64,000 bases of DNA, from assembly GCA_036785375.1 (NCBI GenBank), contig JAWMAR010000007.1:11036001-11100000 (forward strand), read 5' to 3'. The stretch comes from Leucoraja ocellata (taxonomy: Eukaryota). Position 1 is the stretch's first letter, and the number at the start of each line of letters is the position of its first letter. Below the pieces are notes generated by a model. It was not told where the DNA came from, ran no database searches, and worked only from the letters and a program-made list of their open reading frames with translations. Made by a program: the position numbers and the translations under genes. Positions 1 through 64,000 of the stretch are shown here, one piece after another.

Positions 1-176
1 GTCAAAATTGACTTCTCCATTTGAAGCTGTATGACAATTCTTGCAAAGTCTCTTGCGCCCGTTTACACTCTATGATAAATGTACAATTCAGAAAACTACA
101 GAAAACTGCTGGAGTCTCGGTTCTACTCGTCCAGTGGATAGACTTACGGCATTTGAAAGCTCAACGAGAGAAGAGA

Positions 177-225
177 ATGCTGTTCATTTTGCTTTGTGCC
201 TTTGCACTGCCTGTCACCGCTAATC
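177..225 (+). CDS. Signal-peptide exon ([16 protein letters not shown])
   Basis: ATG at 177, hydrophobic leader, consensus donor C|GTAAGT at 225/226, phase 1 matching the downstream Ig exons. Confidence 0.7.
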
Positions 226-12200: not shown

Positions 12201-15200
12201 AGGAGCAGGCCAAGGTAGACTGGAAAGGGATCCTAACAGAAATGACGATGTAACAGGAATGGCAGGAATTTCTGGGCATAATCCGGAAGATGCAGGATCA
12301 TTTCATTCCAAAAAGGAAGAAAGATTCTAAGTAGGAGGCAACCGTGGGTGACAAGAGAAGTTAGGGATAGAATAAAACTAAACAAAAAGATGTATAACAC
12401 AGCAAAGCATAGTCGGAAGCCAGAGGATTGGGAAACTTTCATAGGACAACAGATAGAAACAAAACGGGCAATACGGGCTGAAAAGATGAAGTATGAGGGG
12501 CAGCTGGCCAGGAATATAAGGAAGGACAGTAAAAGCTTCTTTAGATATGTTATGGGAAAAACAGTAGCAAAGTCAAATGTGGGTCCCTTGAATGCAGACA
12601 CGGGTAAAATTATAATGGGGACAAGGAAATGGCAGAAAAGTTGAATAGGTACTTCGGATCTGTCTTCACTAAGGAAGACACAAACAATCTCCCAGATGTA
12701 CTGGAGGACAGAGGATCTAAGGGGGTAAAGGAACTGAAAGAACATTTTATTAGGTTAGAAATATTATTGGGTAGGCTAATGGGACTGAAGGATGATAAAT
12801 CCCCTGGGCCTGATGGTCTGCATCCCAGGGTCCTCAGGGAGGTGGCTCTAAAAATAGTGGACGTATTGGTGAACATTTTCCAATGTTCAATAGATTCAGG
12901 ATCAGTTCCTGTGGATTGGAGGATTGCTAATGTTATCCCATTTTTCAAGAAAGGAGCGAGAGAGAAAACGGGGAATCGCAGACCAGTTAGCCTGACTTCA
13001 GTGGTGAGAAAGATGCTGGAGTCAATTATTAAAGAGGTAATAATGGGGCATTTGGATAGCAGTAAAAGGATTAGTCCAAGTCAACATGGATTTATGAAAG
13101 GGAAATCATGCTTGACTAATCTTCTGGAATTTTTTGAGGATGTGACAAGTAAAATGGATGAAGGGGAGCCAGTGGATGCAGTGTGTCTAGACTTTCAGAT
13201 AGCCTTTGATAAGGTCCCGCATGGGACACTGGTTACTAAAATTAGAGCACATTGTATTGGGGGTAGGGTGTTGACATGAATAGAAAATTGATTGGTAAAC
13301 AGGAAGCAAAGAGTAGGAGTGAACGGGTCCTTTTCAGAATGGTAGGCAGTGGCGAGTGGATTGCCGCAAGACTTGGTGTTGGGGCCGCAAATATTTACCA
13401 CATATTAATGATTTGGAAGAGGGAATTAGGAGCTACACTAGCAAGTTTGCAGATGACACAAAGCTGGGTGGCAGTGTGAACTGTGAAGAGGATGTTAGGA
13501 GGTTGCAAAGTGACCAGGACAGGTTGAGCGAGTGGGCAGATGAGTGGCAGATGCAGTGTAATATAGATGAATATGAGGTTATCCACTTTGGCGGCAAAAA
13601 CAAGAGGGTAGATTATTATCTCAATTGGGTTAGGTTATGTAAGGGGGAGGTACAGCAAGACCTGGGTGGCCTTGTACACCAGTCACTGAAAGTTGGCTTA
13701 CAGGTACAGCAGGCAGTGACGAAAGCTAATGGAATGTTAGGCTTCATAACAAGAGGATTTCAGTATAAGAGGTTCTTCTGCAGTTGTATAGGGCCCTGGT
13801 AAGACCACATCTGCAGTGTTATGTACAGTTTTGGTCTCCTAATTTGAGGAAGGACGTTCTTGTGATTGAGGCAGTGCAGCATAGGTTCACGAGATTGATC
13901 CCTGGGATGGTGGGACTGTCATATGAGGATAGATTGAAAAGACTAGGCTGGAGTTTAGAAGGATGAGGGGGTATCTTATTGAAACATATAAAATAAAAGG
14001 ACTGAACAATCTAGATGCAGGAAAATTGTTCCCAATGTTGGGCGAGTCCAGAACCAGGGGCCACAGTCTTAGAATAAAGGGGAGGCCATTTAAGGTCTGA
14101 GGTGAGAAAAAATATTTTCACCCAAAGAGTTGTGAATTTGTGGAATTCCCTGCCACAGAGGGTAGTGGAGGCCAAATTACTGGATGGATTTAAGAGAGAG
14201 TTAGATAGAGCTCCAGGGGCTAGTGGAGTCAAGGGATATGGGTAGAAGGCTGGCACGGGTTATTGATTGGGGACGATCAGCTATGATCACAATGAATGGC
14301 GGTGCTGGCTCGAAGGGCCAAATGGCCTCCTCCTGCACCTATTTTCTATGTCTCTATGTTTCTATCTTTGAGATGTGGGAAACAAACTAAGAAAGAGAAA
14401 CCCATGCAGTTATGGATGGAAAGTGCAAACTGTACACAGCATCTGAGGTCAGGATTAAACTCTGAGTCCCTAGAGTTGTGAGTTAGCAGCTCCACTAGCT
14501 GCTCCACTGTGCCAGCTGTGTACATCCTCGATTAGCGGTCAGGTACTTCCTTGGTGGGATCTTTCTGTGCACTACTTGCCTGTGGCATTCCCAACGCTAC
14601 TTCACCGCCAACACTTCAAACCTGTGAAGCTCTGTGGACCGCCCCCTGTCTGTGAGGGAAGTGATGTAAATGCAAGGTCTCTCCCGGACAGCAGCTTAGA
14701 GCTGTGAGAGATGTGGCTCCAGTGAAGAGCCGACACAGCCCGGAGGAGGGGAACCACTGTTAGTGTCACAGTCCCACCTCCCCATTTCTCACAGCTCACC
14801 ACATAGTGACGGTGACAAACAGCACAGCAGCATCACAGTTCAACTGTCTTCCACAAGGGCAGGGACCCAGGGTGGGCGCATCCTCCGACAGTGACTGTGG
14901 CCCTCAGTTCAGTCTAACGTTACATCTCTGTGTCTTCACAGGCTGCAGTATCAGTGGTTGGACCATGGAGACACCGGACAAGGTGATGGGAAGGAAGGGG
15001 AAGCTCGTGGTTCTGTACTGCAAGTTCACTCACCCTCACCATGAATACAAAGGCAACATCAACATCATCTTGAACGAGGAGAAGGAGATGACCAAGAAGA
15101 CCCTTTTCAAATACAAAAATTATCGATCGAGCGGCAAGTATAAAAATGAGATCGTGAAAAATGTAGGAGCTCGCTACAGACCAATGGGGGACCCTCGGAA

Positions 15201-30200: not shown

Positions 30201-33200
30201 ATTGTCTTCATTTTATCTCAATCCTTTGTAAAGTAAAGTATCCTTTATTGTCATTCAGACCTTCCGGTCTGAACAAAGTTTTGTGCCTTGCAGTCATACA
30301 TATAATAAAATAACAAAAACACACAATAAACCCAAATTTAACATCCACCACAGTGAGTCTACCAGGCACCTCCTCACTGTGATGGAAGGCAAAAGTCTTA
30401 AAGTCTTTGTCTCTTCCTTCCTTGTTCTCCCTCTGCGCTGAGGCGATCCAGGCTTCCCATGTTGTGACCCCGCGGGGTGATGGTAAGTCAGTTCCACGGC
30501 TGAATCCAAGCTCCGCGAACGGGCCGGCTCAAACTCCGCGGCCCGGGGTGGTTGAAACTGTCGCCCTCCAGTCCAGCAGACGAAACTGTTGTAGTGGGAG
30601 CTCTGGAAAAACAGATCACCAACCTGTGACCTGTGAGCTCCCGACGATGTTGTCCCCTGGGCCTGCGGCTGAGCCTCCGAAGTCGGGTCGCCGCCGGAAC
30701 GCCGCCACAGCTCCATCCATCTGCCACTCAACCCTTTTCTGAATCTACCAACATCTGTCAGTTTTTGCCACACCCGTTCCCCTTCAACTCTCCTTGCCAG
30801 CTTTCTCCCCTCTACTGCATCAATCTGATGAAGGATCGCGACCCAAAACATTATCTATCCATTTCTCTCCACCGCAGAGCCTGCGTGGCCCTATGAATTT
30901 CTCCAGCACTTTGTTTTTTACTGGGGAAAGTAGTTATGGACCAACTGCTATTGGGAAAGTTTGCATCAGGAAGTGAGAGTGATTTAATGATGAGAGGTTG
31001 TAAATTTAGTCTCGAAGGAAAAGGATTCATATGCAAAGTTTAAGGAACAGAAATTGGACAGGGCCTTTAAGGAAGATTATGAAAGAAAAGAACTTGAGCA
31101 GGGAATTAGTAGGCCCAGATGGGAGCATGATGGGCTCAGAGACCCATGAGCTGAGAGTAGAGAAGTGTGTTAAAGGAGGAAGAGTGGGAGAGGTATCTAG
31201 AGAGAATTCTCACGGAATACTTTCCTGTGTCTTTGACAGGTTCACAGCAGCGTGTGTGTTGTGTGGATGCCAGCACGGCCAATGGTCGGAAACCACAAGG
31301 ATCAGAGCCAGGTAATAGGAGAATCTGCCAAAACTTCCTTTCATATTGAGGCCATTCTTTGGAAAAGCAGAGCTCAAACCCACATTTAATAACTGGCCTT
31401 TCAATTGTCGCTACCACCTACCCTCCTTCCCTACCTCCAACAGCCTTCTAATTAGATCAGCAAAGACAATCCCTCTCAGAGCAGATCAGGTTGTGTGTTC
31501 AAGTGGAATATTAATACTTAAAAGACTCGCCTTAAGGCCCAGGGCTTGCACTAAGATTCCAGATTCCTCAGTCATGGGAATTAATCTACTCTGTCGAACC
31601 TACTGGAAGTATTTTGTATTGGACACCTGTCCTTAACTCTAAAGATTGAAGGTCCAACCTATTTAATCTCTTTGTCATCCCAATAACCAGCCTCATGAAC
31701 CTTTGCTGCTCAACCTGCAAAGTAAGTACAGATAGTACTGCTCAACATAGGTTTTGAAATCGCAAATTGGCTACAACACGATTGCTAAATTAGGTAATGC
31801 TATTATGCAGCTTGAATTGGTTATAAAATAATCTCTATCAGGAAGTAGAGATCCAGTTAAAAGTTACTTTGGAAAGCAGAAAAAAAGCTATCTGGGAAAA
31901 AACAACCTGGGGAGAAAAAAACATGTTCATGTAACCTCCCTGCAGTAAGCAGTCACCACTGTCTCTTATGAATACAGATCATCATGGGTGGCCAAGCAAT
32001 CATTTAAATTGACATGTGTGCAGTGATACTCTATTAAACAATGTAACATTGAGCCATCAGTATTTGTAGATTGCAGCTACAAAACTAAACTTGGAGCTAT
32101 AAAATAGATCTTTGTTTTTAAAAAAAACCAGTGGGAGAAATAACATTGTTATTGCAAGCCTCATAATCACCAGCCCCTTACCTCCTTTTTCTCATTGGCA
32201 CAATTATTTTCAGAATGTAATTTTTTACAATAAGATGTTCCTTAAGAATGCAGCATTCGTGGTATAGCGGAATTGCCTGTACATTGCTTTTTAGGGTAAG
32301 GAGACCAATATTATATCTAATACACCAGCTTTGGTTTTGAAAGGTCATTGTAATTTGGAATTGATCCTATTATTCCCAAAGTAACAATACCTGATCAATG
32401 TATCTCATAGATTTGCACAAATAACCTCATCTATGTAACCCTCCACCACGCCTGAGGATAGGGTTGGAAAGTTCTGCATTTTGCGATTACTCCAGGATTC
32501 CCTTCAGCTTTGACCCTGTGGGAGGGGATGGGGTGGACAGTTTGGGAGCTCTAATTTCTCCATTGAAATACGCATTGCTTTTTTGTGTCTTTGACAGGTT
32601 CACAGGAGCCTGAAGGGGATCCTATTTACAGTGTTGTTGATTTAAACACAGAGACAAGAAACAGGGCAGCCACCCAGGCAGTCCCAACTCCGAGAGAATT
32701 GGACAGGAATGTTGGTGAGTGCAGTGATGGTTATCATTTGAAATTTGCACAGAGGTAACCAGGAGGAAGAGATGCAGAAAGTAAAGGCCAGCTTTCACGA
32801 TCCAGCTCCTGCAGCAGAGTGGTTAAAAGTTGTAATTTTATGGATACAGCACGGAAATAGGCTGTTCTGCCCACTGAGTTCATGCCAACCATTGATCATA
32901 CTTTCACACTAATTCTATATCAACCCACTTTCTCATCATCTCCATGGATCTTAGGGGCGATTTAACCCGCATATCTATGAGGTGGTGGAGGAAACTGGAA
33001 CATCCGGAGGTAAGCCAAGCATTCATGGGGACGAGCACAGACTCCATACAGTCTGTATTGAACCCAGATCTCTGGTGCTGTGCTGTGGCGCTGCTGGCAG
33101 AGCTGCTGCCTCACAGCGCTTGAGACCCGTGTTCGATCCCAAACTTGGGTGATATCAGTGTGGAGTTTGCACATTTTACCTGCTGCGCCACTGTGCTGCC

Positions 33201-36200: not shown

Positions 36201-39200
36201 TACTGTTTTATAGTCCTTTGTTTTACGGTTTTAATGGTTTGAAATAACTTCTTGTCCATGAGTTCTCATGTACAGCACTTTGTGGCAACTGCAGTTGTTT
36301 AAAGTGCTTTATAAATAAAGTTATTATTATTATTATTACTCTCCAGATGCCCTCATTTACAGCATTGTTCACATTCAAAGCCGTTCTCGAGTAGGAGTGG
36401 AGATAGGTAAGGAACAGTAAGCACACGGTGAGCTGTGAAACAACGTGGTGGTGTGGACGCCCCATGTAAAATAGTGTCCCCAACGGGCTGGGAGGCAAAC
36501 CCTTGATGTACTGACTAGAACCATCCACTGGTACTGACCATATACACTGGGCTTCCCAGCGAGCCTGTGATCCAGAGCTCTCCATATCCAACATTCAGGG
36601 CAGGTGCAGCAAAGGCCAGACATGGTGGAAGTAGTAACAAAGACCCAGGACATAGAGTTACTAGAGATCCTGGTGTTGTTTATTTTCCGCTTCCCACCAA
36701 CGGGCAGCCAAGCATTAGACCTGGAAGTACAATGCTGTCTATTCTGCAGTACGGTTCTGTACAGAAGCAGCGAGGGTTCTCTTGGGGCATGCAACGTATC
36801 ATAATGAGGGGTGAAGAACAGTCTTGGCAAAAGATGGACCACTATAGGAGGGGCAATCGGAACAGGCAAGAGACAGTGATTATCAAAGGTGGGGACTCAT
36901 GGAGTCATAGAGCACAGAGACAGGCTCTTTGGTCCAACTTGCTCAAGCCAACCAAAATGCCCATCCACACTAGTCCCAATTGCCTGCATTTGGCCCATAT
37001 CCCTATACACCTTTCCAAACCAAGTACCTGTCCCAATGTCGTTTAAATGGGAGTGGGTGGTTTGAGTGATAGAATACAGTGGGGGAGCGATGCTGGAATG
37101 CAATAACAATCTGTGTTCTTTTCAGATCCCCAGGAGTATCAGAATAACACTCTGTACAGCAATTTGCACATTCAAAGACCTCCCTGCAAAGAGGAGGAGA
37201 CTGGTAAGGACCACCGAATACACCGTGAGCGGCAAAATACACACATCTGCGAGGACACCCCTTTGGAACACATCAAACCCATTTCATACTGAGTGAGCCC
37301 AGCACCGATCCCTGTGATACACCACTAGTCACAGGCCTCCAGTCTGAAAAGCAACCCATCACCACCACCTTCCACCAAGCCAAATTCATATCCAATTGGC
37401 TCATTCACCCTAGACCTCATGTGATTTAATCTTCCAGAATGGTAAGCCATTTGAGAACTTGGCAAAGGCCATGTTAACGTTCATGCAGGCAATGTGTACC
37501 AGCTCTGCCCTCGTCAATAGACTCATCGAAAGCTCAGTCAAATTCACACACAAATTCCACACACAAAGCCATGCCCTCATTTACAGCATTGTTCACATTC
37601 AAAGCCGTTCTCGAGCTCTCCATATCCAACATTCAGGGGCAATCGGAACAGGCAAGAGACAGTGATTATCAAAGGTGGGGACTCATAGAGTCATAGAGCA
37701 CAGAGACAGGCTATTTGGTCCATCTTGCTCAAGCCAACCAAAATGCCCATCCACACTAGTCCCAATTGCCTGCATTTGGCCCATATCCCTATACACCTTT
37801 CCAAACCAAGTACCTGTCCCAATGTTGTTCAAATTGGAGTGGGTGGTTTGTGTGATAGAATATTGTGATAGAGGATTTCTTGGAATGTATGCGGGATAGT
37901 TATCTAAATCAACATGTAGAGGAACCAACGAGAGAGCAGGCTATTTTAGACTGGGTATTGAGTAATGAGGAAGGGTTAGTTAGCAATCTTGTTGTACGTG
38001 CCCCCTTGGGCAAGAGTGACCATAATATGGTTGAGTTCTTCATTAGGATGGAGAGTGACATTGTTAATTCAGAAACAATGGTTCTGAACTTAAAGAAAGG
38101 TAACTTTGAGGGTATGAGACGTGAATTGGCCAAGATTGACTGGCAATTAATTCTAAAAGGGTTGACGGTGGATATGCAATGGAAGACATTTAAAGACTGC
38201 ATGGATGAACTACAAAAATTGTTCATCCCAGTTTGGCAAAAGAATAAATCAGGGAAGGTAGTACATCCGTGGATAACAAGGGAAATCAGGGATAGTATCA
38301 AAGCGAAGGATGATGCGTACAAATTAGCCAGAAAAAGCAGCATACCGGAGGACTGGGAGAAATTCAGAGACCAGCAGAGGAGGACAAAGGGCTTAATTAG
38401 GAAAGGAAAAATAGATTATGAAAGAAAACTGGCAGGGAACATAAAAACTAACTGCAAACGTTTTTATAGATGTGTGAAAAGAAAGAGATTAGTTAAAACA
38501 AATGTAGGTCCCTTGCAGTCAGAAACAGGTGAGTTGATCATGGGGAACAAGGATATGGCGGACCAATTGAATAACTACTTTAGTTCCGTCTTCACTAAGG
38601 AAGACATAAATAATTTGCCGGAAATAGCAGGGGACCGCGGGTCAAAGGAGTTGGAGGAATTGAGTGAAATCCAGGTTAGCCGGGAAGTGGTGTTGGGTAA
38701 ATTGAATGGATTAAAGGCCGATAAATCCCCAGGGCCAGATAGTCTGCATCCCAGAGTGCTTACGGAAGTAGCTCCAGAAATAGTGGATGCATTAGTAATA
38801 ATCTTTCAAAACTCTTTAGATTCTGGAGTAGTTCCTGAGGATTGGCGGGTAGCAAATGTAACCCCACTTTTTAAGAAGGGAGGGAGAGAGAAAACGGGGA
38901 ATTACAGACCAGTTAGTCTAACATCGGTAGTGGGGAAACTGCTAGAGTCAGTTATTAAAGATGGGATAGCAGCACATTTGGAAAGTGGTGAAATCATTGG
39001 ACAAAGTCAGCATGGATTTACGAAAGGTAAATCATGTCTGACGAATCTTATAGAGTTTTTCCAGGATGTAACTAGTAGCGTGGATAGGGGAGAACCAGTG
39101 GATGTGGTGTATCTGGACTTCCAGAAGGCTTTCGACAAGGTCCCACACAAACCTAAAGTACACGGCATTGGGGGTTCAGTATTGATGTGGATAGAGAACT

Positions 39201-42200
39201 GGCTGGGAAACAGGAAGCAAAGAGTAGGAGTAAACGGGTCCTTTTCACAATGGCAGGCAGTGACTAGTGGGGTACCGCAAGGCTCAGTGCTGGGACCCCA
39301 GCTATTTACAATATATATTAATGATCTGGATGAGGGAATTGAAGGCAATATCTCCAAGTTTGCGGATGACACTAAGCTGGGGGGCAGTGTTAGCTGTGAG
39401 GAGGATGCTAGGACACTGCAAGGTGACTTGGATAGGCTGGGTGAGTGGGCAAATGTTTGGCAGATGCAGTATAATGTGGATAAATGTGAGGTTATCCATT
39501 TTGGTGGCAAAAACAGGAAAGCAGACTATTATCTAAATGGTGGCTGACTAGGAAAAGGGGAGATGCAGCGAGACCTGGGTGTCATGGTACACCAGTCATT
39601 GAAAGTAGGCATGCAGGTGCAGCAGGCAGTGAAGAAAGCGAATGGTATGTTTGCTTTCATAGCAAAAGGATTTGAGTATAGGAGCAGGGAGGTTCTACTG
39701 CAGTTGTACAGGGTCTTGGTGAGACCACACCTGGAGTATTGCGTACAGTTTTGGTCTCCAAATCTGAGGAAGGACATTATTGACATAGAGGGAGTGCAGA
39801 GAAGGTTCACCAGACTGATTCCTGGGATGTCAGGACTGTCTTATGAAGAAAGACTGGATAGACTTGGTTTATACTCTCTAGAATTTAGGAGATTGAGAGG
39901 GGATCTTATAGAAACTTACAAAATTCTTAAGGGGTTGGACAGGCTAGATGCAGGAAGATTGCTCCCGATGTTGGGGAAGTCCAGGACAAGGGGTCACAGC
40001 TTAAGGATAAGGGCGAAATCCTTTAAAACCGAGATGAGAAGAACTTTTTTCACACAGAGAGTGGTGAATCTCTGGAATTATCTGCCGCAGAGGGTAGTCG
40101 AGGCCAGTTCATTGAATATATTTAAGAGGGAGTTAAATGTGGCCCTTGTGGCTAAGGGGATCAAAGGGTATGGAAAGAAGGCAGGTACGGGATACTGAGT
40201 TGGATGATCAGCCATGATCATATTGAATAGCGGTGCAGGCTCGAAGGGCCGAATGGCCTACTCCTGCACCTAATTTCTATGTTTCTATGTTTCTAATACA
40301 GTGAGGGAGAGATGCTGGAATGCAATAACAATCTGTGTTCTTTTCAGATCCCCAGGAGTATCAGAATAACACTCTGTACAGCAATTTGCACATTCAAAGA
40401 CCTCCCTGCAAAGAGGAGGAGACTGGTAAGGACCACTGAACACACCGTGAGCGGCAAAATACACACATCTGCGAGGACACCCCTTGGGAACACATCAAAC
40501 CCATTTCATACTGAGTGAGCCCAGCACCGATCCCTGTGATACACCACTAGTCACAGGCCTCCAGTCTGAAAAGCAACCCATCACCACCACCTTCCACCAA
40601 GCCAAATTCATATCCAATTGGCTCATTCACCCTAGACCTCATGTGATTTAATCTTCCAGAATGGTAAGACATGTGAGAACTTGGCAAAGGCCTTGTTAAC
40701 GTCCATGCAGGCAATGTGTACCAGCTCTGCCCTCATCAATAGACTCATCGCCTCATCAAAAGCTCAGTCAAATTCATGAGTCACACACAAATTCCACACA
40801 CAAAGCCATGCCCTCATTTACAGCATTGTTCACGTTCAAAGCCGTTCTCGAGTAGGAGTGGAGATAGGTAAGGAACAGTAAGCACACGGTGAGCTGTGAA
40901 ACAACGTGGTGGTGTGGACGCCCCAAGTAAAATAGTGTCCCCAACGGGCTGGGAGGCAAACCCTTGATGTACTGACTAGAACCATCCACTGGCACTGACA
41001 ATATACACTGGGTTTCCCAGCGAGCCTGTGATCCAGAGCTCTCGATATCCAACATTCAGGGCAGGTGCAGCAAAGGCCAGACATGGTGGAAGTAGTAACA
41101 AAGACCCAGGACATAGAGTTACTAGAGATCCTGGTGTGGTTTATTTTCCGCTTCCCACCAATGGGCAGCCAAGCGTTAGACCTGGAAGTACAATGCTGTC
41201 TATTCTGCAGTACGGTTCTATACAGAAGCAGCGAGGGTTCTCTTGGGGCATGCAATGTATCATAATGAGGGGTGAAGAACAGTCTTGGCAAAAGATGGAC
41301 CACTATAGGAGGGGCAATCGGAACAGGCAAGAGACGGTGATTATCAAAGGTGGGGACTCATAGAGTCATAGAGCACAGAGACAGGCTCTTTGGTCCAACT
41401 TGCTCAAGCCAACCAAAATGCCCATCCACACTAGTCCCAATTGCCTGCATTTGGCCCATATCCCTATACACCTTTCCAAACCAAGTACCTGTCCCAATGT
41501 CGTTTAAATGGGAGTGGGTGGTTTGAGTCATAGAATACAGTGGGGGAGCGATGCTGGAATGCAATAACAATCTGTGTTCTTTTCAGATCCCCAGGAGTAT
41601 CAGAATAACACTCTGTACAGTACTGTGCACATTCAAAGACCTCCCTGCAAAGAGGAGGAGACTGGTAAGGACCACCGAACACACCGTGAGCGGCAAAATA
41701 CACACATCTGCGAGGACACCCCTTGGGAACACATCAAACCCATTTCATACTGAGTGAGCCCAGCACCGATCCCTGTGATACACCACTAGTCACAGGCCTC
41801 CATTCTGAGAAGCAACCCATCACCACCACCTTCCACCAAGCCAAATTCATATCCAATTGGCTCATTCACCCTAGACCTCATGTGATTTAATCTTCCAGAA
41901 TGGTAAGCCATGTGAGAACTTGGCAAAGGCCATGTTAACGTCCATGCAGGCAATGTGTACCAGCTCTGCCCTCATCAATAGACTCATCGCCTCATCAAAA
42001 GCTCAGTCAAATTCATGAGTCACACACAAATTCCACACACAAAGCCATGCTAACTATCCCTCATCAGTCGTTACTGTTCCAAATCCGGGTACATCCTTGT
42101 ACATCCTTGTAAAGCTCATTCTACGCTTCCCCCCAGTCTAGTTTCAGTCAATAAGATACTGAGTCAAGCCCTTACGCATCTAAATTTTATTTTGGAAATA

Positions 42201-44867
42201 CACAATAACAGTTCCTCACTACTATACCTAACCACTGTGGGTTCGATCCTTGTATCTGATTGGCCAAGCTCTCCTAGCCTTGTGCAAGCAGAGACACTCC
42301 AAACAGTCGCACAGTCCCAAACGTTCTCCCAGAAGATCGACTCAGGACCTCGTGGGAGTGGCCTTTTATAGGTGCCCGAACCTTGAGGGACGAATCATAT
42401 GGGGGTGGTCTCTTTACAGTCCAATAACAGATATCGATTAACACAGTACATGATAGACATTTCCCAAACCCAATAATACAGTAACTAATACTTTGTATTC
42501 AAACGGAGCTTCTGGAAGGAAGCAAACATAGCAACATGTGCCTTGTTATTCAAGAAACCTAGACAAGGCTCAACACTTAATCCAATCAACATCTTGCAAA
42601 GTAAAGCTTTGGAACAATATTAACAATGTATATATCTGGTTTGCATTCACCCAATCCGTTTCATGCAATTTACACCTAATTGTAAGAATCCGCAGAAGTC
42701 CCATTCTTTTCCTACAACTCTTATCTAGGCTCCAGACAAGCTGGCACCATTCTGCAGCTTGTCCCATTTCTGCAGAAGGCACATTTAAATTGACCAAATG
42801 GCCTAGCAGACCAGAAGCCTTTACACAATTTTAGTGTCTTGGCATCTCCAATTTGGCCAGAATTAACATCAAAATCCCCTCCAGTAATTCCCTCACCACT
42901 ACAGGCTCACTGGTCTGTAGTTCCCTGTCTTGTACTTGCAGCCCTTCTTAAATAGGGGCACAACATTTACCACCCTCCAATCTTCCAGTACCACTCTTAT
43001 GTTAAAGATGATGCAAATGCCTCTGCCAGAGCACTTGAAATTTCGTCCCTAGCTTCCTGCAATATCCTAGGATACATCTCATCAGGCCTGGGACATTTAT
43101 TTACCCTAATATGTCTTAAGACTGCCAGCACCTCTTTTGTAATGTAGATATGTTCCAATGTATTGCAATTCAATACTCTTAATTCCTAACTTCCATGACC
43201 TTCTCCACGATAAATACAGATGAGAAATGTTAATTTAAAACCTCGCCCATCTCCCATTGATGACCATGTTGATCCTATTCTCTTTATTTAGCCTTTTGCT
43301 CTTAATATACTTCGAGAATTTCTCTGAGTTCTCCGTTATCTTATCTGCCATAGCTATCTCATGTCCTCTTTTTGTCCTCTTTATTTCGCTCTAAATTGAA
43401 AGCCTACATCCTTTATACTTGAGAGGTTTGCTTGATTCCCAGCTACCTATATCTGACATATGCCCCTGTTGCATGACTAATGTTTCAATGTCCATCATAA
43501 ATCATGTTGAATGGCTGAATGGCCAACTTCCCTCCCTATTCCTTACATTCTGTGGACAAGATTCCTCAGACAGTAGCTTGGCTCTGTGTAGTTGGCTGTC
43601 AACCAGAGGACATGGGTTTAACTCAAGAACCAGGTGACTTTTGTTTAACGTGAGAGCTAAAAGATATAATAGGAAAAAGAAGGGCAACATTTTCACACAG
43701 AGGGTGGTGGTCAGAGCTACCAGAGGAGGGTAGTTGAGGAAGGTACTATGACAACATTTCAAAGACATTTGGTCAGGTACATGGAAAGGAAAGGTTTAGA
43801 GACATATGGGCCAAATGTGGGCAAGTGGGCTTAGTGTAGATGGGCATCTTGGAAGACATGGGCAAGTTGGACCGAAGGGCCTGTTTCCATACTGTATGAC
43901 TCTGACTCTATAAACAGCTGATGATCCTGGTCTCAGGGGGTTGGATGGATGATGGGGGGAAGGGGTCAGTGTGGGAGCAAAGAGCTTCGAAATGGGGCAA
44001 GTTCCCTCTGGCAATGAGAAGAGTAAGAGTACCCGCAATATAGAGGAGAGAGTCTCTGACAAGCCGGTTCTCTGATGGGTGAGAGGGCCTGGCCTTCCTC
44101 AAACTGGGTTGAATTCAAGCAATTTTCTAATATTGAGAGGGCAGGTCCAGGGAAAGCCAGGCACAATTGAAGAAGGACCAGAATACAAGGAGCCCAAATC
44201 AACCAGGATGACCATATCATCAGTTTATCTAACCTGTCTAACCAGCAGTTGAGTGAAAGACTGGGGAGAGTGGCCATCAGACGATAATGGAGAGGGGGTG
44301 TTGGATCTGGGGTGGAAGGCTGACTGAATTTGCAGAGAGGGTTCCAGTTCTGGATAGGCTCTGAGTTTGAGAGATTAGAAGTTTTCCTCTCACGAGGGGA
44401 ATGGATTGGTTGTTTGCATACCTATCTATTCCAAGAGTACGGCAATCAAATGCGGGAGGATGAGTTTAAGATGCGACGGGAAAGATATAATAGGAACCTG
44501 ATAGGTAAATTTTTCACACAGAGGGTGATGGTATATGGAACGAGCTGCCAGAAGAGGTAGTTGAGGCAAATACTCTGACAACATTTAAAAGACAGGTGCA
44601 TGGTTTGGAAAGGTTAAGAGGGATATAGGCCAAACACAAGCATGTGGGATTAGAGTATATGGGGCATCTTGGTCGGCATTGGAAAGTTGGGCCGAAGGGC
44701 CTGTTTTCGTGTTGTATAACTATGGTTCTCAATGGTTTGAATCAAGATAGAAGAATCTTACAATGACAACATAAAATCATAAAAATTGAATTGTTTATCT
44801 TCCAGGCTGCATTTATGCAACGGTTGTATATACAAAAGAACAGGCCAAGGATGCAAGTGGAGAATAA
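177..44867 (+). CDS. Multi-exon Siglec-15-like Ig-superfamily receptor (SP-V-V-V-V-C2-TM-multi-ITIM/ITSM tail), ~815 aa if all 13 exons are joined
   Basis: Exons: 177-225, 14942-15331, 19451-19819, 22799-23161, 25453-25815, 26642-27010, 31240-31311, 32598-32714, 36347-36406, 37126-37203, 40348-40425, 41587-41664, 44806-44867. All have AG/GT boundaries and phase-1 introns. Summed length is 2448 nt, open to TAA at 44865-44867. The first V and the C2-TM exon resemble Siglec-15. Confidence 0.75.
814..4614 (-). pseudogene. L1 ORF2 (endonuclease-reverse transcriptase) with one in-frame TAA at 1264-1266
   Basis: Motifs [37 protein letters not shown]. The frame continues past the stop (HRLYYSK...CDKC...HSFVFC) into ORF 814-1101. 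Confidence 0.92.
5541..6572 (-). pseudogene. L1 ORF1 (coiled coil + RRM/CTD) with one in-frame TGA at 6102-6104
   Basis: ORFs 6102-6572 and 5541-6011 share a frame. The linker reads [15 protein letters not shown], followed by AHR, PRQIIVK and YPA motifs typical of L1 ORF1. Confidence 0.88.
6981..10930 (-). mobile_element. CR1-clade LINE (HER1-like), near full length, disrupted ORF2
   Basis: SGNH-esterase ORF1 at 10064-10876 (GDS...DGLH). EN/RT fragments ([29 protein letters not shown]). 3' tail (CTATGTTT)n at 6981-7017. Confidence 0.93.
12130..14362 (+). mobile_element. 5'-truncated CR1-clade LINE, degenerate
   Basis: RT fragments ([12 protein letters not shown]) with frameshifts; 3' tail TTCTATGTCTCTATGTTTCT. 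Confidence 0.9.
14375..14515 (-). mobile_element. Degenerate tRNA-derived SINE (V-SINE/HE1-like)
   Basis: Similar to the SINE copy at 28690-28850 (GGCACAGTGGAGCAGC...GAGCTGCT...GACTCAGAGTTTAATCCTGAC on the minus strand). Confidence 0.45.
14942..15331 (+). CDS. V-set Ig exon V0, Siglec-15-like, retains the essential Arg
   Basis: Acceptor TCTTCACAG|, donor |[33 protein letters not shown] and CRVEL parallel Siglec-15 CTFTHPHRHYDG, RFRLLGNPRRNDLSL and CRVEF (recalled from memory). Confidence 0.88.
18570..18935 (+). mobile_element. Old CR1 fragment (ORF1 end / endonuclease start)
   Basis: GLKYVYFNV...WNYDVVAI resembles the CR1 ORF2 N-terminus. Confidence 0.55.
19451..19819 (+). CDS. V-set Ig exon V1
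   Basis: ATLNC...W...RYELVG...DASIRV...D-x-x-x-YFC. Acceptor is a weak CCGAG|, donor |GTAAGG, phase 1-1. Confidence 0.85.
20000..20085 (+). pseudogene. Decayed relic of the C2-set exon 5' end
   Basis: CAGCCACCATCTTGGAGCT..GTGATAATGTATCTGGAGA..GTGTGCGGG aligns to 26642-26725 with indels and a shifted acceptor. Confidence 0.65.
21530..22445 (+). mobile_element. CR1 RT 3' fragment, degenerate
   Basis: [22 protein letters not shown] and VVNLWNSLP fragments with frameshifts. Confidence 0.85.
22799..23161 (+). CDS. V-set Ig exon V2
   Basis: ATLPC...W...RYDLLG...DASIRV...DYSC. Acceptor TCTCTCTGCAAG|, donor |GTAAGG, phase 1-1. Confidence 0.88.
23235..23790 (-). mobile_element. Degenerate CR1-like 3' fragment
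   Basis: FTQRVVG-type C-terminal peptide in ORF 23360-23599. Confidence 0.6.
24561..25224. mobile_element. Non-autonomous PIF/Harbinger-type DNA transposon (MITE)
   Basis: Imperfect ~24-bp TIRs (AGGGCTTGTCCCACTTAGGTGATT / AATCGCGTACGTTGGACAGGCCCT), TAA duplication at 24558-24560 and 25225-25227, CGAC-rich non-coding interior. Confidence 0.75.
25453..25815 (+). CDS. V-set Ig exon V3
   Basis: ATLPC...W...RYELVG...DASIRV...DYFC. Acceptor TTTTCTCTATACAAG|, donor |GTAAGG, phase 1-1. Confidence 0.88.
25881..26058 (+). mobile_element. Short 3' end of a young CR1/HER1-like LINE
   Basis: Near-identical to 40118-40293, (CTATGTTT)n tail, and interrupts intron sequence that is contiguous after V1 and V2. 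Confidence 0.9.
26642..27010 (+). CDS. C2-set Ig domain + transmembrane exon
   Basis: [18 protein letters not shown]...GKYTCVAEN parallels Siglec-15 LCTAEGEPPPALAWSGP...GRYTCTAAN. Hydrophobic [20 protein letters not shown] is followed by KK. Acceptor TTCTCCAAG|, donor |GTGAGT. Confidence 0.9.
27085..28400 (+). mobile_element. Old CR1-like RT/3' fragments
   Basis: GTTAGGCCACATTTGGAGTATT...CAGTTCTGGTC and TTTGCAGATGAT segments are homologous to the other CR1 copies; heavily degraded. Confidence 0.55.
28690..28850 (-). mobile_element. tRNA-derived SINE (V-SINE/HE1-like)
   Basis: The minus strand has A-box-like TGGCACAGCGGTAG and B-box-like GGTTTGATCC, then GGAGTTTGTAAGTTCTCCCTGT. Related copies lie near 32960-33200 and 52655-52830. 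Confidence 0.6.
28920..29260 (-). mobile_element. Rex1/Babar-like LINE 3' fragment
   Basis: [12 protein letters not shown]...[13 protein letters not shown]...RFRNSFFP, homologous to 49769-50011. Confidence 0.65.
29502..30132. repeat. Minisatellite, 20-bp unit CCACTGGGACACA(G/A)GGAGGC, about 31 copies
   Basis: Direct head-to-tail units with single-base variants and no spacers. Confidence 0.97.
31240..31311 (+). CDS. Cytoplasmic exon 1 ([23 protein letters not shown])
   Basis: Acceptor TTTCCTGTGTCTTTGACAG|, donor CAG|GTAATA, 72 nt, phase 1-1, open frame. Confidence 0.65.
32598..32714 (+). CDS. Cytoplasmic exon 2 with ITIM-like PIYSVV
   Basis: Acceptor TTTTTTGTGTCTTTGACAG|, donor |GTGAGT, 117 nt, phase 1-1; [39 protein letters not shown]. 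Confidence 0.78.
34461..35020 (-). mobile_element. CR1/HER1-like 3' fragment, young
   Basis: Near-identical to 6990-7560; ORF 34551-34985 is the RT C-terminus. Confidence 0.92.
35783..36338 (+). mobile_element. L2-clade LINE 3' fragment with (TTA)n tail
   Basis: [14 protein letters not shown]...RAFSIAAP...LP...LKTHF is an L2-type ORF2 C-terminus, followed by AATAAAG(TTA)n. Flanked by CT(T/C)TCCAGAT direct repeats at 35773-35782 and 36339-36348. Confidence 0.85.
36347..36406 (+). CDS. Cytoplasmic exon 3 with canonical ITIM LIYSIV
   Basis: CTCTCCAG|...|GTAAGG, 60 nt, phase 1-1; [20 protein letters not shown]. Confidence 0.72.
37126..37203 (+). CDS. Cytoplasmic exon 4a ([26 protein letters not shown])
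   Basis: TGTTCTTTTCAG|...|GTAAGG, 78 nt, phase 1-1, TxYxxL motif. Confidence 0.78.
37862..40293 (+). mobile_element. Young 5'-truncated CR1/HER1-like LINE inserted in repeat unit 2
   Basis: 560-aa and 211-aa ORF2 parts and a (CTATGTTT)n tail. It interrupts GATAGAATACAG, which is contiguous in units 1 and 3. Confidence 0.95.
40348..40425 (+). CDS. Cytoplasmic exon 4b (identical to 4a, TLYSNL)
   Basis: Same intact acceptor and donor, 78 nt. Confidence 0.7.
41587..41664 (+). CDS. Cytoplasmic exon 4c with canonical ITSM TLYSTV
   Basis: Same acceptor and donor; differs from 4a/4b only at AGCAATTTG vs AGTACTGTG. Confidence 0.78.
44806..44867 (+). CDS. Terminal coding exon with ITIM/ITSM-like CIYATV
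   Basis: Acceptor TTGTTTATCTTCCAG|, phase 1; [20 protein letters not shown]. Confidence 0.72.
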
Positions 44868-62480: not shown

Positions 62481-62620
62481 GGCACATCGATTCCCGGAGG
62501 AGGAAAACACCTGTGCCCAACTTCGCTCCAGCACGGTGAGAAAATTCATTTTCAGCAGCAAAGGACTTGGCAGTTGACTGGCTGCAATCTACTATTAGGG
62601 ACCAGTATGTGAGTGACCAG

Positions 62621-62685
62621 GTGTAGTATCTGTTCTTATCAGTTTAATATCTGATACGTCCCTTATCTAGGGACCATATATTAAA
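62621..62685 (+). ncRNA. Internal U2 snRNA fragment (about nt 31-95), not a complete gene
   Basis: GTGTAGTATCTGTTCTTATCAGTTTAATATCTGATACGTCCCTTATCTAGGGACCATATATTAAA matches vertebrate U2 (branch-point pairing region, stems IIa/IIb). It lacks nt 1-30 and the Sm site. Confidence 0.9.
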
Positions 62686-64000
62686 TAAAATCTATAATAG
62701 CTGTTATCATCAGTTTTAATGTCTTATATGTTCCTTAGCTAAGGACCATATAAGTAGGAGTGCCCAGAATTGAGGGCATTAGAGTGGGGTTGACCGGCTG
62801 CAACGACCGCAAGGGACCAGTACCGTCAGTACGGGGGTGGGTCCCACGGGTCTAAGATAAAGGAGCAGCCAGGAGCGCTGAGAGCGTTGGAGCCGGGTTA
62901 AAGGAATAGATGGAATCAGCTGTGCCAGTTATCCTCCACACCGGCCATATCCACTCCACGGAAGGAAGGACAAGCTGGAGAAGGAGGACCGTGGAACAGG
63001 GGGCAGCCAGCAGCAGCCAGCGGCACTTGGATCAACCGTAGTGGGATCAGCGGTGCCCGATGTCGGCCCCGCACCGGCCAGCTCCATGCGGCCGAGCGGT
63101 AGGCTAGACACAAATCAAACAAGGTAGTGGACTGAGAAGGGTCCGACTTTGCATAAAACCGCCGGCAACCAGCGCCCGAGAGGGCTGGAGCGGGAAGAAG
63201 CGGTGTATGGAGCCTTGCTCCAACGTGATAACCCACAGCAGTACCTCTTTGAGGGCTGCACAATGCTTCTACCCCATCAGAGGGGAGCACTGTGGGTCAG
63301 TTCTGGGTTGACTTGCAAGAGGGGTCCGCAGAACAAAAGACAAGTGGGCAGCAGTTAAGCCCCACATGGGTACCCCGTGCGGGACCCCTAGAGATCTCTA
63401 ACTCTATAAAAAAGAGTAGGCAGGACCCTGATGGGCCAGAGCCTGGTAATACAGCATCCCATGATCCTAACACAGCAGGGACTCTGCTGGACATGGTGGC
63501 TGATTACTTTAACCAAGTCAAACATGGGTAGACTTGGATCCAGGATGGCAATAGTATTACTATATGTCTGGCCACAAACGCCAACAGGGAAAAAATTTAC
63601 AGACACTGGCCAGACATCTGCCACCTGGCAACGGTGAGGCATTACGGGTGCCCAGTGTAAACCAATGCATTTGGCAGCATATGGGGACGAACATCAGGAA
63701 CCAGGACCTCAAGATCCAGAGAACCTTAAAGGGATTGACGGAAGGCATCATAGAATACACTCGCACCCTGGACTAAATGTAGGTAACCAAAGACCATCTA
63801 GACGCACTAGCTCTGTTTAGTAATATGCAATATGATCTGAACTACACATGGAAGGCTGCCATTCAGCCAGCACTGGGACCCCAAAAAATGCTACCATTTG
63901 CAAACAAAGAACCGTGAGTGGACAAAGCCAAGACACTGGGGCTCATCAAGGCCAGCGCAAGGGCCTATTTTGGAGCATGATACCGGCCACAGGCAACGCC

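What the first reader, a model, noticed from the sequence alone, without database searches (positions are those of the whole stretch)
177..44867. Fully modular, inhibitory-type Siglec-15-like receptor: four V-set domains, no TM lysine, six-tyrosine-motif tail
Seen: 13 exons, all introns phase 1, one open frame giving SP-V0-V1-V2-V3-C2-TM and a tail with PIYSVV, LIYSIV, TLYSNL, TLYSNL, TLYSTV and CIYATV. Known: mammalian Siglec-15 is a single V plus single C2 receptor that signals through a TM Lys and DAP12. Siglecs normally extend with C2 rather than V domains (Siglec-12 has two V). Inference: this is a lineage-specific receptor with Siglec-15 ancestry and inverted (inhibitory/switch) signalling. 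Because every internal exon is a symmetric cassette, exon skipping could vary both ectodomain composition and motif number, giving a combinatorial innate-receptor system in a cartilaginous fish.
Basis: partly seen in the sequence, partly recalled or inferred. Interest (0 to 1): 0.9.

Follow-up and report, generated by a model that had tools for sequence, protein, structure and literature searches.

The report
Inhibitory-type Siglec-15-like receptor gene
An intact 13-exon gene encodes a cell-surface receptor whose outermost domain resembles the sugar-binding domain of Siglec-15 but whose tail carries inhibitory-type tyrosine motifs; near-identical architectures are already predicted, though undescribed, in other skates and cartilaginous fishes.

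Summary
I found 13 + strand exons between 177 and 44867, with 12 GT-AG introns, all phase 1, and no stop in frame. They give a signal peptide, V0, V1, V2, V3, a C2+TM exon (no charged residue inside the TM) and seven tail exons carrying the six named motifs.

V0's best solved relative is human Siglec-15 (E 4e-13), and it keeps the sialic-acid Arg. V1-V3 have H, H and Y at that place.

The gene is not a one-off. RefSeq models in Leucoraja erinacea (LOC129695366) and Amblyraja radiata (LOC116971578) show the same V0-V1-V2-V3-C2 order, and the Leucoraja model also has this TM and tail. Models with one to three V0 domains and one or two non-Arg V domains, with tyrosine-motif tails, occur in Rhinoraja, Mobula, Narcine, Heptranchias and Callorhinchus. 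Partners with a TM lysine are named Siglec-15.

Only LIYSIV and TLYSTV fit the strict ITIM and ITSM consensus.

One RNA contig from a close homologue joins V3 to C2-TM and leaves at the predicted donor. Transcription of this copy, use of all tail exons, sialic-acid binding and inhibitory signalling are all unshown.

The scan also noted paralogues on neighbouring DNA. My reading: a new variant of a known kind, of moderate interest.

The parts
177..225 (+). Exon 1: ATG plus a 16-codon hydrophobic signal peptide ([16 protein letters not shown]), donor GTAAGT, phase 1. An in-frame upstream ATG lies at 72.
   Evidence: The same peptide is joined directly to the V0 exon in RefSeq models P0090 and P0002 (Amblyraja) and P0094 (Rhinoraja). 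tblastn gives 92%, 92% and 89% identity on 72-227 / 156-227 / 147-227.
14942..15331 (+). Exon 2: V0, a Siglec-15-like V-set domain with the F-strand Arg (..LNCRVEL..), the W of GWTMETP, and F and E at the places of human Y154 and E155. It lacks the C95-C104 cysteine pair.
   Evidence: Pfam V-set E 1e-06. PDB 7zoz Siglec-15 E 4.2e-13 with W, C, CRVE and E aligned. Residue roles from PMC10264397. C26, C107, R108, V109 and E110 are invariant in 18 of 18 aligned V domains.
19451..19819 (+). Exon 3: V1, V-set, with His at the Arg place (FCHVW) and 1 N-glycan sequon.
   Evidence: Pfam V-set 3.5e-15. Siglec-15 is the second-best PDB hit at 2.7e-07. Sequons. Orthologous V1 clade with Leucoraja and Amblyraja domain 2, SH-aLRT 99.
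22799..23161 (+). Exon 4: V2, V-set, with His at the Arg place (SCHVY).
   Evidence: Pfam V-set 5e-15. 70-75% DNA identity to V1 and V3. Clade with Leucoraja and Amblyraja domain 3, SH-aLRT 100.
25453..25815 (+). Exon 5: V3, V-set, with Tyr at the Arg place (FCYVW).
   Evidence: Pfam V-set 1.2e-14. 97% identical to Leucoraja P0089 over 25446-25814. An RNA contig of run X1 lies on 25452-25815 with 9 differences.
26642..27010 (+). Exon 6: C2-type Ig domain, stalk and transmembrane helix ([21 protein letters not shown], then KK) in one exon. No Lys, Arg, Asp or Glu inside the helix. Donor GTGAGT.
   Evidence: PDB Siglec-15 E 4.2e-05 over residues 20-117. The same X1 contig continues on 26644-27009 and then leaves the laid stretch.
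31240..31311 (+). Exon 7: membrane-proximal cytoplasmic exon ([23 protein letters not shown]).
   Evidence: 88% identical to Leucoraja P0089 residues 609-634. Aligns to Mobula P0004 SRQHRCCVD...
32598..32714 (+). Exon 8: PIYSVV exon (ITIM-like, Pro at -2).
   Evidence: 97% identical to P0089 and 85% to Rhinoraja P0094.
36347..36406 (+). Exon 9: LIYSIV exon (canonical ITIM).
   Evidence: 100% identical over 24 residues to the end of P0089, which reads through this donor.
37126..37203 (+). Exon 10: TLYSNL exon, copy A of a triplicated unit.
   Evidence: 73-76% identical to Rhinoraja P0094 residues 741-772.
37571..37615 (+). Truncated LIYSIV copy (unit B) with neither acceptor nor donor. Not an exon.
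37865..40198 (+). Reverse-transcriptase ORFs of a retroelement inserted inside unit B, in the intron before exon 11.
   Evidence: ORFs. RVT_1 E 1.4e-29. Repeat coordinates.
40348..40425 (+). Exon 11: TLYSNL exon, copy B, with intact acceptor and donor. Reading past the donor meets a stop.
40808..40867 (+). LIYSIV copy of unit C. It lacks the polypyrimidine/AG acceptor, because the duplication starts at the exon's first base. The donor is kept.
41587..41664 (+). Exon 12: TLYSTV exon (canonical ITSM), copy C.
44806..44867 (+). Exon 13: [19 protein letters not shown] plus stop (ITIM-like, Cys at -2).
   Evidence: 75% identical to the C-terminus of Rhinoraja P0094. Aligns to the ..IYATV.. ends of Mobula, Narcine and Heptranchias models.

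Best explanation
This is an intact gene for a type I membrane receptor of the Siglec-15 family. It belongs to a cartilaginous-fish subfamily that pairs inhibitory-type members with DAP12-type members. Its 13 phase-1 exons encode a signal peptide and a membrane-distal V domain (V0) that keeps the Siglec-15 sialic-acid pocket residues (W, Arg on strand F, aromatic plus Glu on strand G). Next come three paralogous V domains without the Arg, which I read as a glycosylated stalk or secondary binding modules. Then come one C2 domain, an uncharged TM helix and a roughly 190-residue tail with one canonical ITIM, one canonical ITSM and four near-motifs. Shown here: the exon structure, the domain families, the residue conservation and the homology. 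Inferred: V0 binds sialylated ligands through the Arg. Clustering then lets Src-family kinases phosphorylate the tail tyrosines. SHP-1/SHP-2 (and SAP-type adaptors at TxYxxV) dock and damp ITAM signals, including those of the TM-lysine Siglec-15 partner, which shares closely related Vx and C2 domains. Tandem duplication of V exons and of tail exons sets the maximum domain and motif number. Which tail exons are actually used is open.
For: Gene structure: 12 of 12 GT-AG phase-1 introns and open frames. Domains: Pfam V-set in 4 of 4 V exons, Ig in the fifth. Family: V0 matches PDB Siglec-15 at E 4.2e-13, with W, C, CRVE and E aligned (residue roles from PMC10264397). Of 1.84 billion representatives, 79 match V0 at E<=1e-3. 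Every one whose name I looked up is a Siglec-15/-12 or an uncharacterized fish protein. Tree: chondrichthyan V0 (22 rows, SH-aLRT 97) plus bony-vertebrate Siglec-15 V (14 rows) form a clade (99) apart from the Vx domains (28 rows, 99). Whole architecture in relatives: Leucoraja P0111/P0089 = V0-V1-V2-V3-C2-TM-cyt1-PIYSVV-LIYSIV(-TLYSNL). Per-exon identity to the window is 74, 87, 87, 97, 96, 88, 97 and 100%. Rhinoraja P0094 carries the collinear tail through to ..GCIYATVV... SP-V0 junction: present in 3 RefSeq models. Partners: V0-Vx-C2-TM(..LIPLIKFLLL..)-short tail proteins are named Siglec-15 in Leucoraja, Amblyraja, Mobula, Pristis, Hypanus and several sharks. RNA: a 2306-nt contig of run X1 lies on 25452-25815 and then on 26644-27009. 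Its remaining 1580 nt are not on 27010-28779. So V3 to C2-TM splicing and the 27010 donor are used in a close homologue.
Against: No transcript of this very copy was seen. The X1 contig differs by 9 letters in V3, and by 27 letters plus a 12-nt deletion and a 6-nt insertion in exon 6, so it comes from another gene or species. Runs X2, X6 and X23 covered only intronic repeats. The Leucoraja models end by read-through after LIYSIV (X3) or after the first TLYSNL exon (X1), so a six-motif tail has no model support in the nearest relative. Only 2 of 6 motifs are canonical. V0 lacks the Siglec-15 C95-C104 disulfide and has Met aligned to Y87, so sialic-acid binding is not assured. Ligand binding, phosphorylation and SHP recruitment are all inference.
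Confidence: 0.72

Rival explanations
1. The gene is real, but the long six-motif tail is only a genomic maximum. The usual product stops early (intron read-through after the LIYSIV exon, or one TLYS exon only), so it is an ordinary one-ITIM receptor. The triplicated exons are recent duplication debris.
For: Leucoraja isoform X3 ends ..VGVEIGKEQ* by reading through the LIYSIV donor. X1 includes one TLYSNL exon and then reads into the intron. Rhinoraja P0094 has a single SLYSNV exon. The triplication is recent (96-99% identity) and carries a retroelement insertion.
Against: All three TLYS exons keep identical acceptors and GTAAGG donors and open frames. The terminal CIYATV exon is conserved in Rhinoraja, Mobula, Narcine and Heptranchias models. 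Read-through ends of predicted models are often artefacts (my judgement).
Confidence: 0.35
2. V0 no longer works as a sialic-acid lectin. The receptor recognises a protein or pathogen ligand, as in other fast-evolving paired receptors, and the Siglec-15 likeness is only ancestry.
For: V0 is the most divergent exon between close paralogues or orthologues: 74-82% identity against 96-98% for V3 and exon 6. The C95-C104 pair is absent and Y87 is not aligned. In 7 of 13 TM-lysine partners examined the Arg is Leu, so loss of lectin function happens in this family.
Against: Arg, the A-strand Trp, and the G-strand aromatic plus Glu are all kept. Arg is kept in 6 of 9 long-tail or no-TM-Lys members examined.
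Confidence: 0.25
3. This copy is a silent or decaying member of a tandem array. Only its neighbours are expressed.
For: No read or contig matching this copy was found in the four runs laid. Its protein was not among the 27 hits at E<=1e-10 from the 8000 candidates scored. Scan notes report paralogues on both sides (unchecked).
Against: 13 of 13 exons are open and 24 of 24 splice dinucleotides are canonical, despite heavy retroelement load in the introns. The runs laid were not chosen by tissue, and contigs show presence, not absence.
Confidence: 0.1
4. Two genes: SP+V0 is a separate short gene, and V1-V3-C2-TM-tail is another.
For: The SP-V0 intron is 14.7 kb and the V0-V1 intron 4.1 kb. RefSeq has some short or chimeric models in Amblyraja (P0005 185 aa; P0002 fuses the end of one gene to the start of the next).
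Against: V0 ends in phase 1 with no stop or TM. V1 has no signal peptide exon of its own. V0 to V1 is joined in P0003, P0005, P0089/P0111 and P0090, and in every non-skate family member examined.
Confidence: 0.03

Closest known systems
Leucoraja erinacea LOC129695366, isoforms X1 (XP_055488227.1, 790 aa) and X3 (XP_055488229.1, 694 aa), 'uncharacterized protein' (RefSeq prediction)
   Same: Same order: V0(Arg)-V1(His)-V2-V3(Tyr)-C2-TM(no Lys)-cyt1-PIYSVV-LIYSIV(-TLYSNL). V3, exon 6, the PIYSVV exon and the LIYSIV exon are 96-100% identical to the window.
   Different: V0 is only 74% identical, and V1 and V2 87%, so it is a paralogue or orthologue and not this gene. The models start inside V0 (no signal exon) and end by intron read-through, without the CIYATV exon. 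It is a computer prediction with no published description that I could find.
Mammalian Siglec-15 (PDB 7ZOZ; PMC10264397; PMC7226832)
   Same: The V domain is the best solved match to V0. The C64-C142-type B-F disulfide, R143, W44 and E155 are kept, and Y154 is Phe here. The C2 exon also matches.
   Different: Siglec-15 is V-C2 with a TM Lys that binds DAP12/DAP10 and no ITIM (PMC7226832, passages). Here there are three extra V domains, no TM Lys, no C95-C104 pair and a long tyrosine-motif tail.
[quoted passage not shown] Leucoraja XP_055488168.1 = P0096, Amblyraja XP_032874347.1, Mobula P0011, Callorhinchus P0010)
   Same: V0-Vx-C2 ectodomain of the same two V types. P0096's Vx and C2 are 77-79% identical to the window's V3 and C2. 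P0096 sits on a contig of the same length as the Leucoraja four-V gene.
   Different: One Vx only. TM ..LIPLIKFLLL.. with Lys, and an 11-19-residue tail. Arg is replaced by Leu in 7 of 13 examined and kept in 2; my pattern did not resolve 4.
CD33-related Siglecs and Siglec-12 (recalled, not tested here)
   Same: Lectin V domain plus a tail combining an ITIM with a membrane-distal TxYxxV-type motif. Paired activating and inhibitory members. Siglec-12 has two V-sets. RefSeq names the Heptranchias homologue 'Siglec 12'.
   Different: The V0 sequence matches CD33 only at E 3e-3, against 4e-13 for Siglec-15. Those Siglecs lengthen with C2-set domains, not V-sets.
[quoted passage not shown]
   Same: Siglec-15-type V with Arg, C2, a TM without Lys, and a tail with IIYADI and VCYAEV. 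So ITIM-bearing Siglec-15 relatives are not confined to cartilaginous fish.
   Different: Single V. The tail is unrelated in sequence. V0 E-value is only 1.2e-06.

Membership tests
Siglec (I-type lectin) family | N-terminal V-set domain with the conserved strand-F Arg that salt-bridges sialic acid | tested here: met
   V0 ..NCRVEL.. aligns to C142-R143 of 7zoz. R108 is invariant in 18 of 18 aligned domains. The role of R143 comes from PMC10264397 and PMC7226832.
Siglec (I-type lectin) family | Aromatic and other pocket residues (in Siglec-15: W44, Y87, Y154, E155) | tested here: inconclusive
   W, F (for Y154) and E are aligned. Met is aligned to Y87, in a loop where the alignment is weak.
Siglec (I-type lectin) family | V-set followed by C2-set domains only | tested here: not met
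   Three further V-set exons lie between V0 and the single C2.
Siglec (I-type lectin) family | Sialic-acid-dependent binding | not testable with these tools
   Needs a V0-Fc binding assay with sialidase and an Arg mutant.
Siglec-15 orthologue | V domain closest to Siglec-15 | tested here: met
   PDB E 4.2e-13 against 3.4e-3 for the next family. Joint clade, SH-aLRT 99.
Siglec-15 orthologue | Two-domain V-C2 ectodomain | tested here: not met
   V0-V1-V2-V3-C2.
Siglec-15 orthologue | Lys in the TM helix for DAP12/DAP10 | tested here: not met
   The [23 protein letters not shown] has no charged residue. The feature is as stated in PMC7226832.
Siglec-15 orthologue | C95-C104 disulfide of the C'-C'' loop | tested here: not met
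   No Cys at the aligned places in V0 or in the other chondrichthyan V0 domains. The feature comes from PMC10264397.
ITIM-bearing inhibitory immunoreceptors | At least one I/L/V/SxYxxL/V motif in the cytoplasmic tail | tested here: met
   LIYSIV in exon 9. Consensus from PMC5112662.
ITIM-bearing inhibitory immunoreceptors | Uncharged TM (no adaptor pairing) | tested here: met
ITIM-bearing inhibitory immunoreceptors | Tyrosine phosphorylation and SHP-1/SHP-2 recruitment | not testable with these tools
   Needs a biochemical assay.
Paired activating/inhibitory receptor family | A partner with a closely related ectodomain but a charged TM and a short tail | tested here: inconclusive
   Met in sister species (Leucoraja P0096, Amblyraja P0112). 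In this genome it rests only on unchecked scan notes; no such gene lies in the window.

The most novel reading that the evidence does not exclude
Cartilaginous fishes run the Siglec-15 family as a paired-receptor system. The sialic-acid-competent arm is the inhibitory one, while the DAP12 arm has lost the Arg in most elasmobranchs. In the inhibitory arm, both the number of ectodomain V cassettes and the number of tyrosine-motif cassettes are tuned, by recurrent tandem exon duplication and by in-frame cassette splicing. One locus could then give a graded set of receptor lengths and inhibitory strengths. This would also suggest that inhibitory self-sialome sensing, not DAP12 activation, was an early role of the Siglec-15 lineage.
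Probability: 0.2. Interest if true: 0.7.

Novelty: new variant of a known kind. Interest (0 to 1): 0.5.

Why it matters
Reviews treat Siglec-15 as one of four conserved fish Siglecs and as an activating, DAP12-coupled V-C2 receptor (PMC7226832, passages). This locus and its relatives show something different in cartilaginous fishes. There the family is expanded into paired members, and the ITIM/ITSM-type arm keeps the lectin Arg. Its ectodomain is lengthened with V-set rather than C2-set domains, and this happened independently in skates (Vx three times), Heptranchias (Vx twice), Callorhinchus (V0 three times) and lungfish (V0 seven times). That gives a testable case of how lectin receptors change reach and signalling sign. 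It also provides a ready set of natural domain-number variants. It is comparative immunology of moderate reach. The proteins are already in RefSeq as unnamed predictions, so the gain is recognition and description, not discovery of an unknown kind.

Tried and rejected
Tail joints by reads. I asked read laying for 26730-32720 to span exon 6, cyt1 and the PIYSVV exon. I then spent the single counted call on 22780-28779, so the tail joints and the SP-V0 and V0-V1 joints remain unlaid.

Small word shares. Runs X2-X14 (0.11-0.12 of words) looked like orthologous transcripts. Laying X2 and X6 showed only high-depth intronic repeats (23.8-24.2 kb, 25.8-26.2 kb) and zero depth on the exons. I rejected them as expression evidence.

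A soluble isoform. The last 24 residues of Amblyraja P0003 map at 100% to 27785-27856. In the window the base before the needed 'AT' start is G, not an AG acceptor, and the X1 contig uses the whole of exon 6. I did not count it as an exon here.

A candidate exon near 35300 (a weak blastn hit to the donor region) has no open phase-1 frame with an acceptor. Rejected.

Literature. Searches returned no paper describing multi-V or ITIM-bearing Siglec-15-like receptors in cartilaginous fish. The library lacks most subscription journals, and supplements were closed, so I make no claim beyond those searches. Angata 2007 (the original Siglec-15 paper) was not read. It is known to me only as reference 17 of PMC7226832 and from recall. 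The features of CD33-related Siglecs and Siglec-12 are recalled.

All searches were exon by exon or used database proteins.
Full report
WHAT IS THERE. The window is vertebrate DNA rich in retroelements. The five distinct six-residue motif strings are at the stated frames and places. Reading the flanks gave these exons: 177-225 (ATG, 16 hydrophobic codons, GTAAGT), 14942-15331, 19451-19819, 22799-23161, 25453-25815 and 26642-27010. The tail exons are 31240-31311, 32598-32714, 36347-36406, 37126-37203, 40348-40425, 41587-41664 and 44806-44867.

All 12 introns are GT..AG, and every internal exon is a multiple of three and sits in phase 1. None of the 12 split codons is a stop. The codons sum to 815. 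I found it as a diverged copy of the acceptor region of the PIYSVV exon. C2 and TM are not separate exons. The helix [21 protein letters not shown], followed by KK, ends exon 6 and has no charged residue. I built no joined model; all searches were exon by exon.

DOMAINS. Pfam calls V-set for all four V exons (E 1e-06, 3.5e-15, 5e-15, 1.2e-14). It calls Ig_3/Ig_2/I-set/C2-set_2 for the first part of exon 6. Against all PDB chains, V0's best match is human Siglec-15 (7zoz, E 4.2e-13), and the next family is CD33 at 3.4e-3. The alignment puts V0's GW on R43-W44, its two cysteines on C64 and C142, its CRVE on C142-R143-V-E, and F-E on Y154-E155.

The Siglec-15 structure paper names R143 as the salt bridge to sialic acid. 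It names W44, Y87, Y154 and E155 as contacts, and C64-C142 and C95-C104 as disulfides (PMC10264397, passages). V0 has Met aligned to Y87 and no counterpart of C95-C104. In an alignment of 18 Siglec-15-type V domains, C26, F28, P31, D100, C107, R108, V109 and E110 of V0 are invariant.

V1-V3 are paralogues of each other (70-75% DNA identity). Their second-best PDB match is also Siglec-15, at 2.7e-07. The top hit is a triple-VH artefact. At the Arg place they carry His, His and Tyr.

THE TAIL. Under the consensus printed in PMC5112662 (ITIM I/L/V/SxYxxL/V; ITSM TxYxxV/I), LIYSIV is an ITIM and TLYSTV an ITSM. TLYSNL (twice), PIYSVV and CIYATV are near-motifs. The tail also holds other tyrosines (QEYQNN, VVYTKE).

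Exons 10-12 lie in a recent triplication, with units 96-99% alike and a spacing of 1239 nt where undisturbed. The unit begins exactly at the first base of the LIYSIV exon. As a result the two extra LIYSIV copies (37576, 40813) have no acceptor. The three TLYS exons keep identical acceptors and donors. A reverse-transcriptase-bearing element sits inside the middle unit.

RELATIVES. An exhaustive HMMER pass with V0 over 1.84 billion representatives gave 79 proteins at E<=1e-3 and 9 at E<=1e-30. The top ones are RefSeq predictions from cartilaginous fishes and a lungfish.

A second search, seeded with the Amblyraja four-V model P0003, scored only the 8000 candidates sharing the most words. It gave 27 proteins at E<=1e-10. 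Among them is Leucoraja erinacea LOC129695366 X3 (694 aa). Its cluster also holds X1 (790 aa). These read V0-V1-V2-V3-C2[14 protein letters not shown]..-..DPIYSVV..-..ALIYSIV.. X3 then stops by reading through the donor. X1 adds ..NNTLYSNL.. and then reads into the intron.

Mapped on the window, their identity by exon is 74, 87, 87, 97, 96, 88, 97 and 100%. They are therefore a paralogue or orthologue, not this gene. No protein of the window itself appeared.

Other models support the remaining joints and exons:
- Rhinoraja P0094 carries SP-V0-Vx-C2-TM and a collinear tail ending ..[20 protein letters not shown].
- The signal exon is joined to V0 in P0090, P0002 and P0094 (..PVTAD-R-..GWTMETPD).
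- Local alignments place each tail exon, in order, on the tails of the Mobula, Narcine and Heptranchias models.

FAMILY PATTERN. I classified all fetched proteins with the window's exons as phmmer queries. I then checked the strand-F residue by pattern.

The proteins with TM ..LIPLIKFLLL.. (Lys) and 11-19-residue tails are V0-Vx-C2. RefSeq names most of them Siglec-15. Of the 13 examined:
- 7 have Leu at the Arg place (six; Mobula P0011 by reading);
- 2 have Arg (Callorhinchus, Mustelus);
- 4 were not resolved by my pattern.

Of the 9 long-tail or no-Lys members examined:
- 6 have Arg;
- 2 have Cys;
- 1 has Gln.

A quick maximum-likelihood tree of 64 V domains (SH-aLRT only, no bootstrap) gave these groupings:
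- Chondrichthyan V0 (22 rows, 97) groups with bony-vertebrate Siglec-15 V domains (joint clade 99).
- All Vx domains fall in a separate clade (28 rows, 99) that includes Callorhinchus. The V0+Vx arrangement therefore predates the chimaera-elasmobranch split.
- The window's V1, V2 and V3 each group with the same-numbered domain of Leucoraja and Amblyraja (99, 100, 99). The four-V gene therefore predates those genera.
- The two Vx of Heptranchias, the three V0 of Callorhinchus and the lungfish V0 repeats each group within their species. That points to independent expansions.

An ITIM-bearing protein named 'Siglec 15, like' in Conger (V-C2, no TM Lys, IIYADI, VCYAEV) shows that such tails are not confined to cartilaginous fish.

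CASSETTES. RefSeq isoforms of relatives differ by exact in-frame blocks with zero mismatches elsewhere:
- Heptranchias X1/X2 differ by a 24-residue tail block that holds VPVYSII.
- Heptranchias X1/X3 differ by a 120-residue Vx.
- Callorhinchus X1/X2 differ by a 130-residue V0.
- Narcine X1/X2 differ by a 121-residue C2-TM block.

A more distant Narcine receptor has 14 isoforms that differ by 16-17- and 33-residue tail blocks. These are predictions whose RNA support I could not see.

RNA. One run search with 25453-27010 returned no holder on record as RNA. Laying four runs on 22780-28779 gave one informative record. It is a 2306-nt contig of run X1 (kind guessed as RNA, depth 58). Its letters 1-364 lie on 25452-25815 and letters 367-726 on 26644-27009. 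The other 1580 letters are not on the stretch.

That is a V3 to C2-TM splice at the predicted sites, with exit at the predicted 27010 donor. However, the contig has 9 and 27 differences, a 12-nt deletion and a 6-nt insertion in the TM, so it is a homologue and not this copy. X1 also holds low-depth intron-spanning pieces (for example 23132-23702). X2, X6 and the raw RNA run X23 covered only repeats.

WHAT I CONCLUDE. It is a member of a cartilaginous-fish branch of the Siglec-15 family with an uncharged TM and an ITIM/ITSM-type tail, next to TM-lysine partners. This is a paired-receptor arrangement known in kind from CD33-related Siglecs (recalled). The three extra Arg-less V domains and the exon-by-exon tail are real features, and at least two other skate genera share them.

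The likely mechanism is sialoglycan binding by V0, tyrosine phosphorylation and SHP recruitment. That is inference from the family. The polarity ('inverted') is undetermined, and the full six-motif product and combinatorial splicing are unshown.

I found no paper on this in five searches, within a library that lacks most subscription journals. Earlier first-stage notes of this scan report paralogues 49.6 kb upstream and 8.6 kb downstream, and TM-Lys clusters elsewhere in the genome. I did not check them.

Noticed in passing
window 62582-62758 (+): Full-length match to U2 spliceosomal RNA (Rfam RF00004, 63.3 bits against a gathering score of 46, model positions 1-192) in the GC-rich last 4 kb of the window. 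It could be a gene or a pseudogene copy.
   Followed up: no
window 1264-4614 (-): Uninterrupted 1116-aa ORF with endonuclease (Exo_endo_phos 1.5e-13) and reverse transcriptase (RVT_1 6e-41). This is a seemingly intact LINE in the 14.7-kb first intron.
   Followed up: partly
window 10064-10876 (-): 270-aa ORF with a GDSL-lipase/esterase-type domain (1.1e-11) next to RT fragments. It looks like an esterase-bearing ORF1 of a retroelement.
   Followed up: no
window 29502-30133: Minisatellite of 31.6 copies of a 20-nt unit (95% matches) in the intron between exon 6 and the first cytoplasmic exon. It blocked read laying across that intron.
   Followed up: partly
window 27785-27859 (+): A stretch whose translation is 100% identical to the last 24 residues of Amblyraja P0003, a model that lacks the TM. 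In the window it has no AG acceptor in the needed place. A GTGAGA donor candidate lies inside exon 6 at 26900.
   Followed up: partly
window 23780-24180 and 25780-26180: Short interspersed repeats with very high depth in all four runs laid. They explain the 0.11-0.12 word shares of organisms B and C in the run search.
   Followed up: partly
window 72-176 (+): An in-frame ATG 35 codons upstream of the signal-peptide ATG. The Amblyraja model P0090 starts at the equivalent codon (92% identity over 72-227), so the transcribed first exon probably reaches at least this far.
   Followed up: no
window 14944-14946 and 15304-15306 (+): V0 has two extra cysteines (first residue of the exon, CSISGW, and ..FECPHG near its end). 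They co-occur in P0002 and are both absent in P0090. This could be an extra A-G strand disulfide.
   Followed up: no
window 37204-37224, 40426-40446, 41665-41685 (+): A second GT (..ACC|GTGAGC) lies 21 nt past each TLYS-exon donor and keeps phase 1. The Rhinoraja model appears to use the equivalent distal donor. In the middle copy the extension holds an in-frame TGA.
   Followed up: partly
proteins P0095, P0096, P0103, P0104, P0108, P0110, P0011: In elasmobranch proteins named Siglec-15 (TM Lys), the sialic-acid Arg is Leu. Callorhinchus and Mustelus keep Arg.
   Followed up: partly
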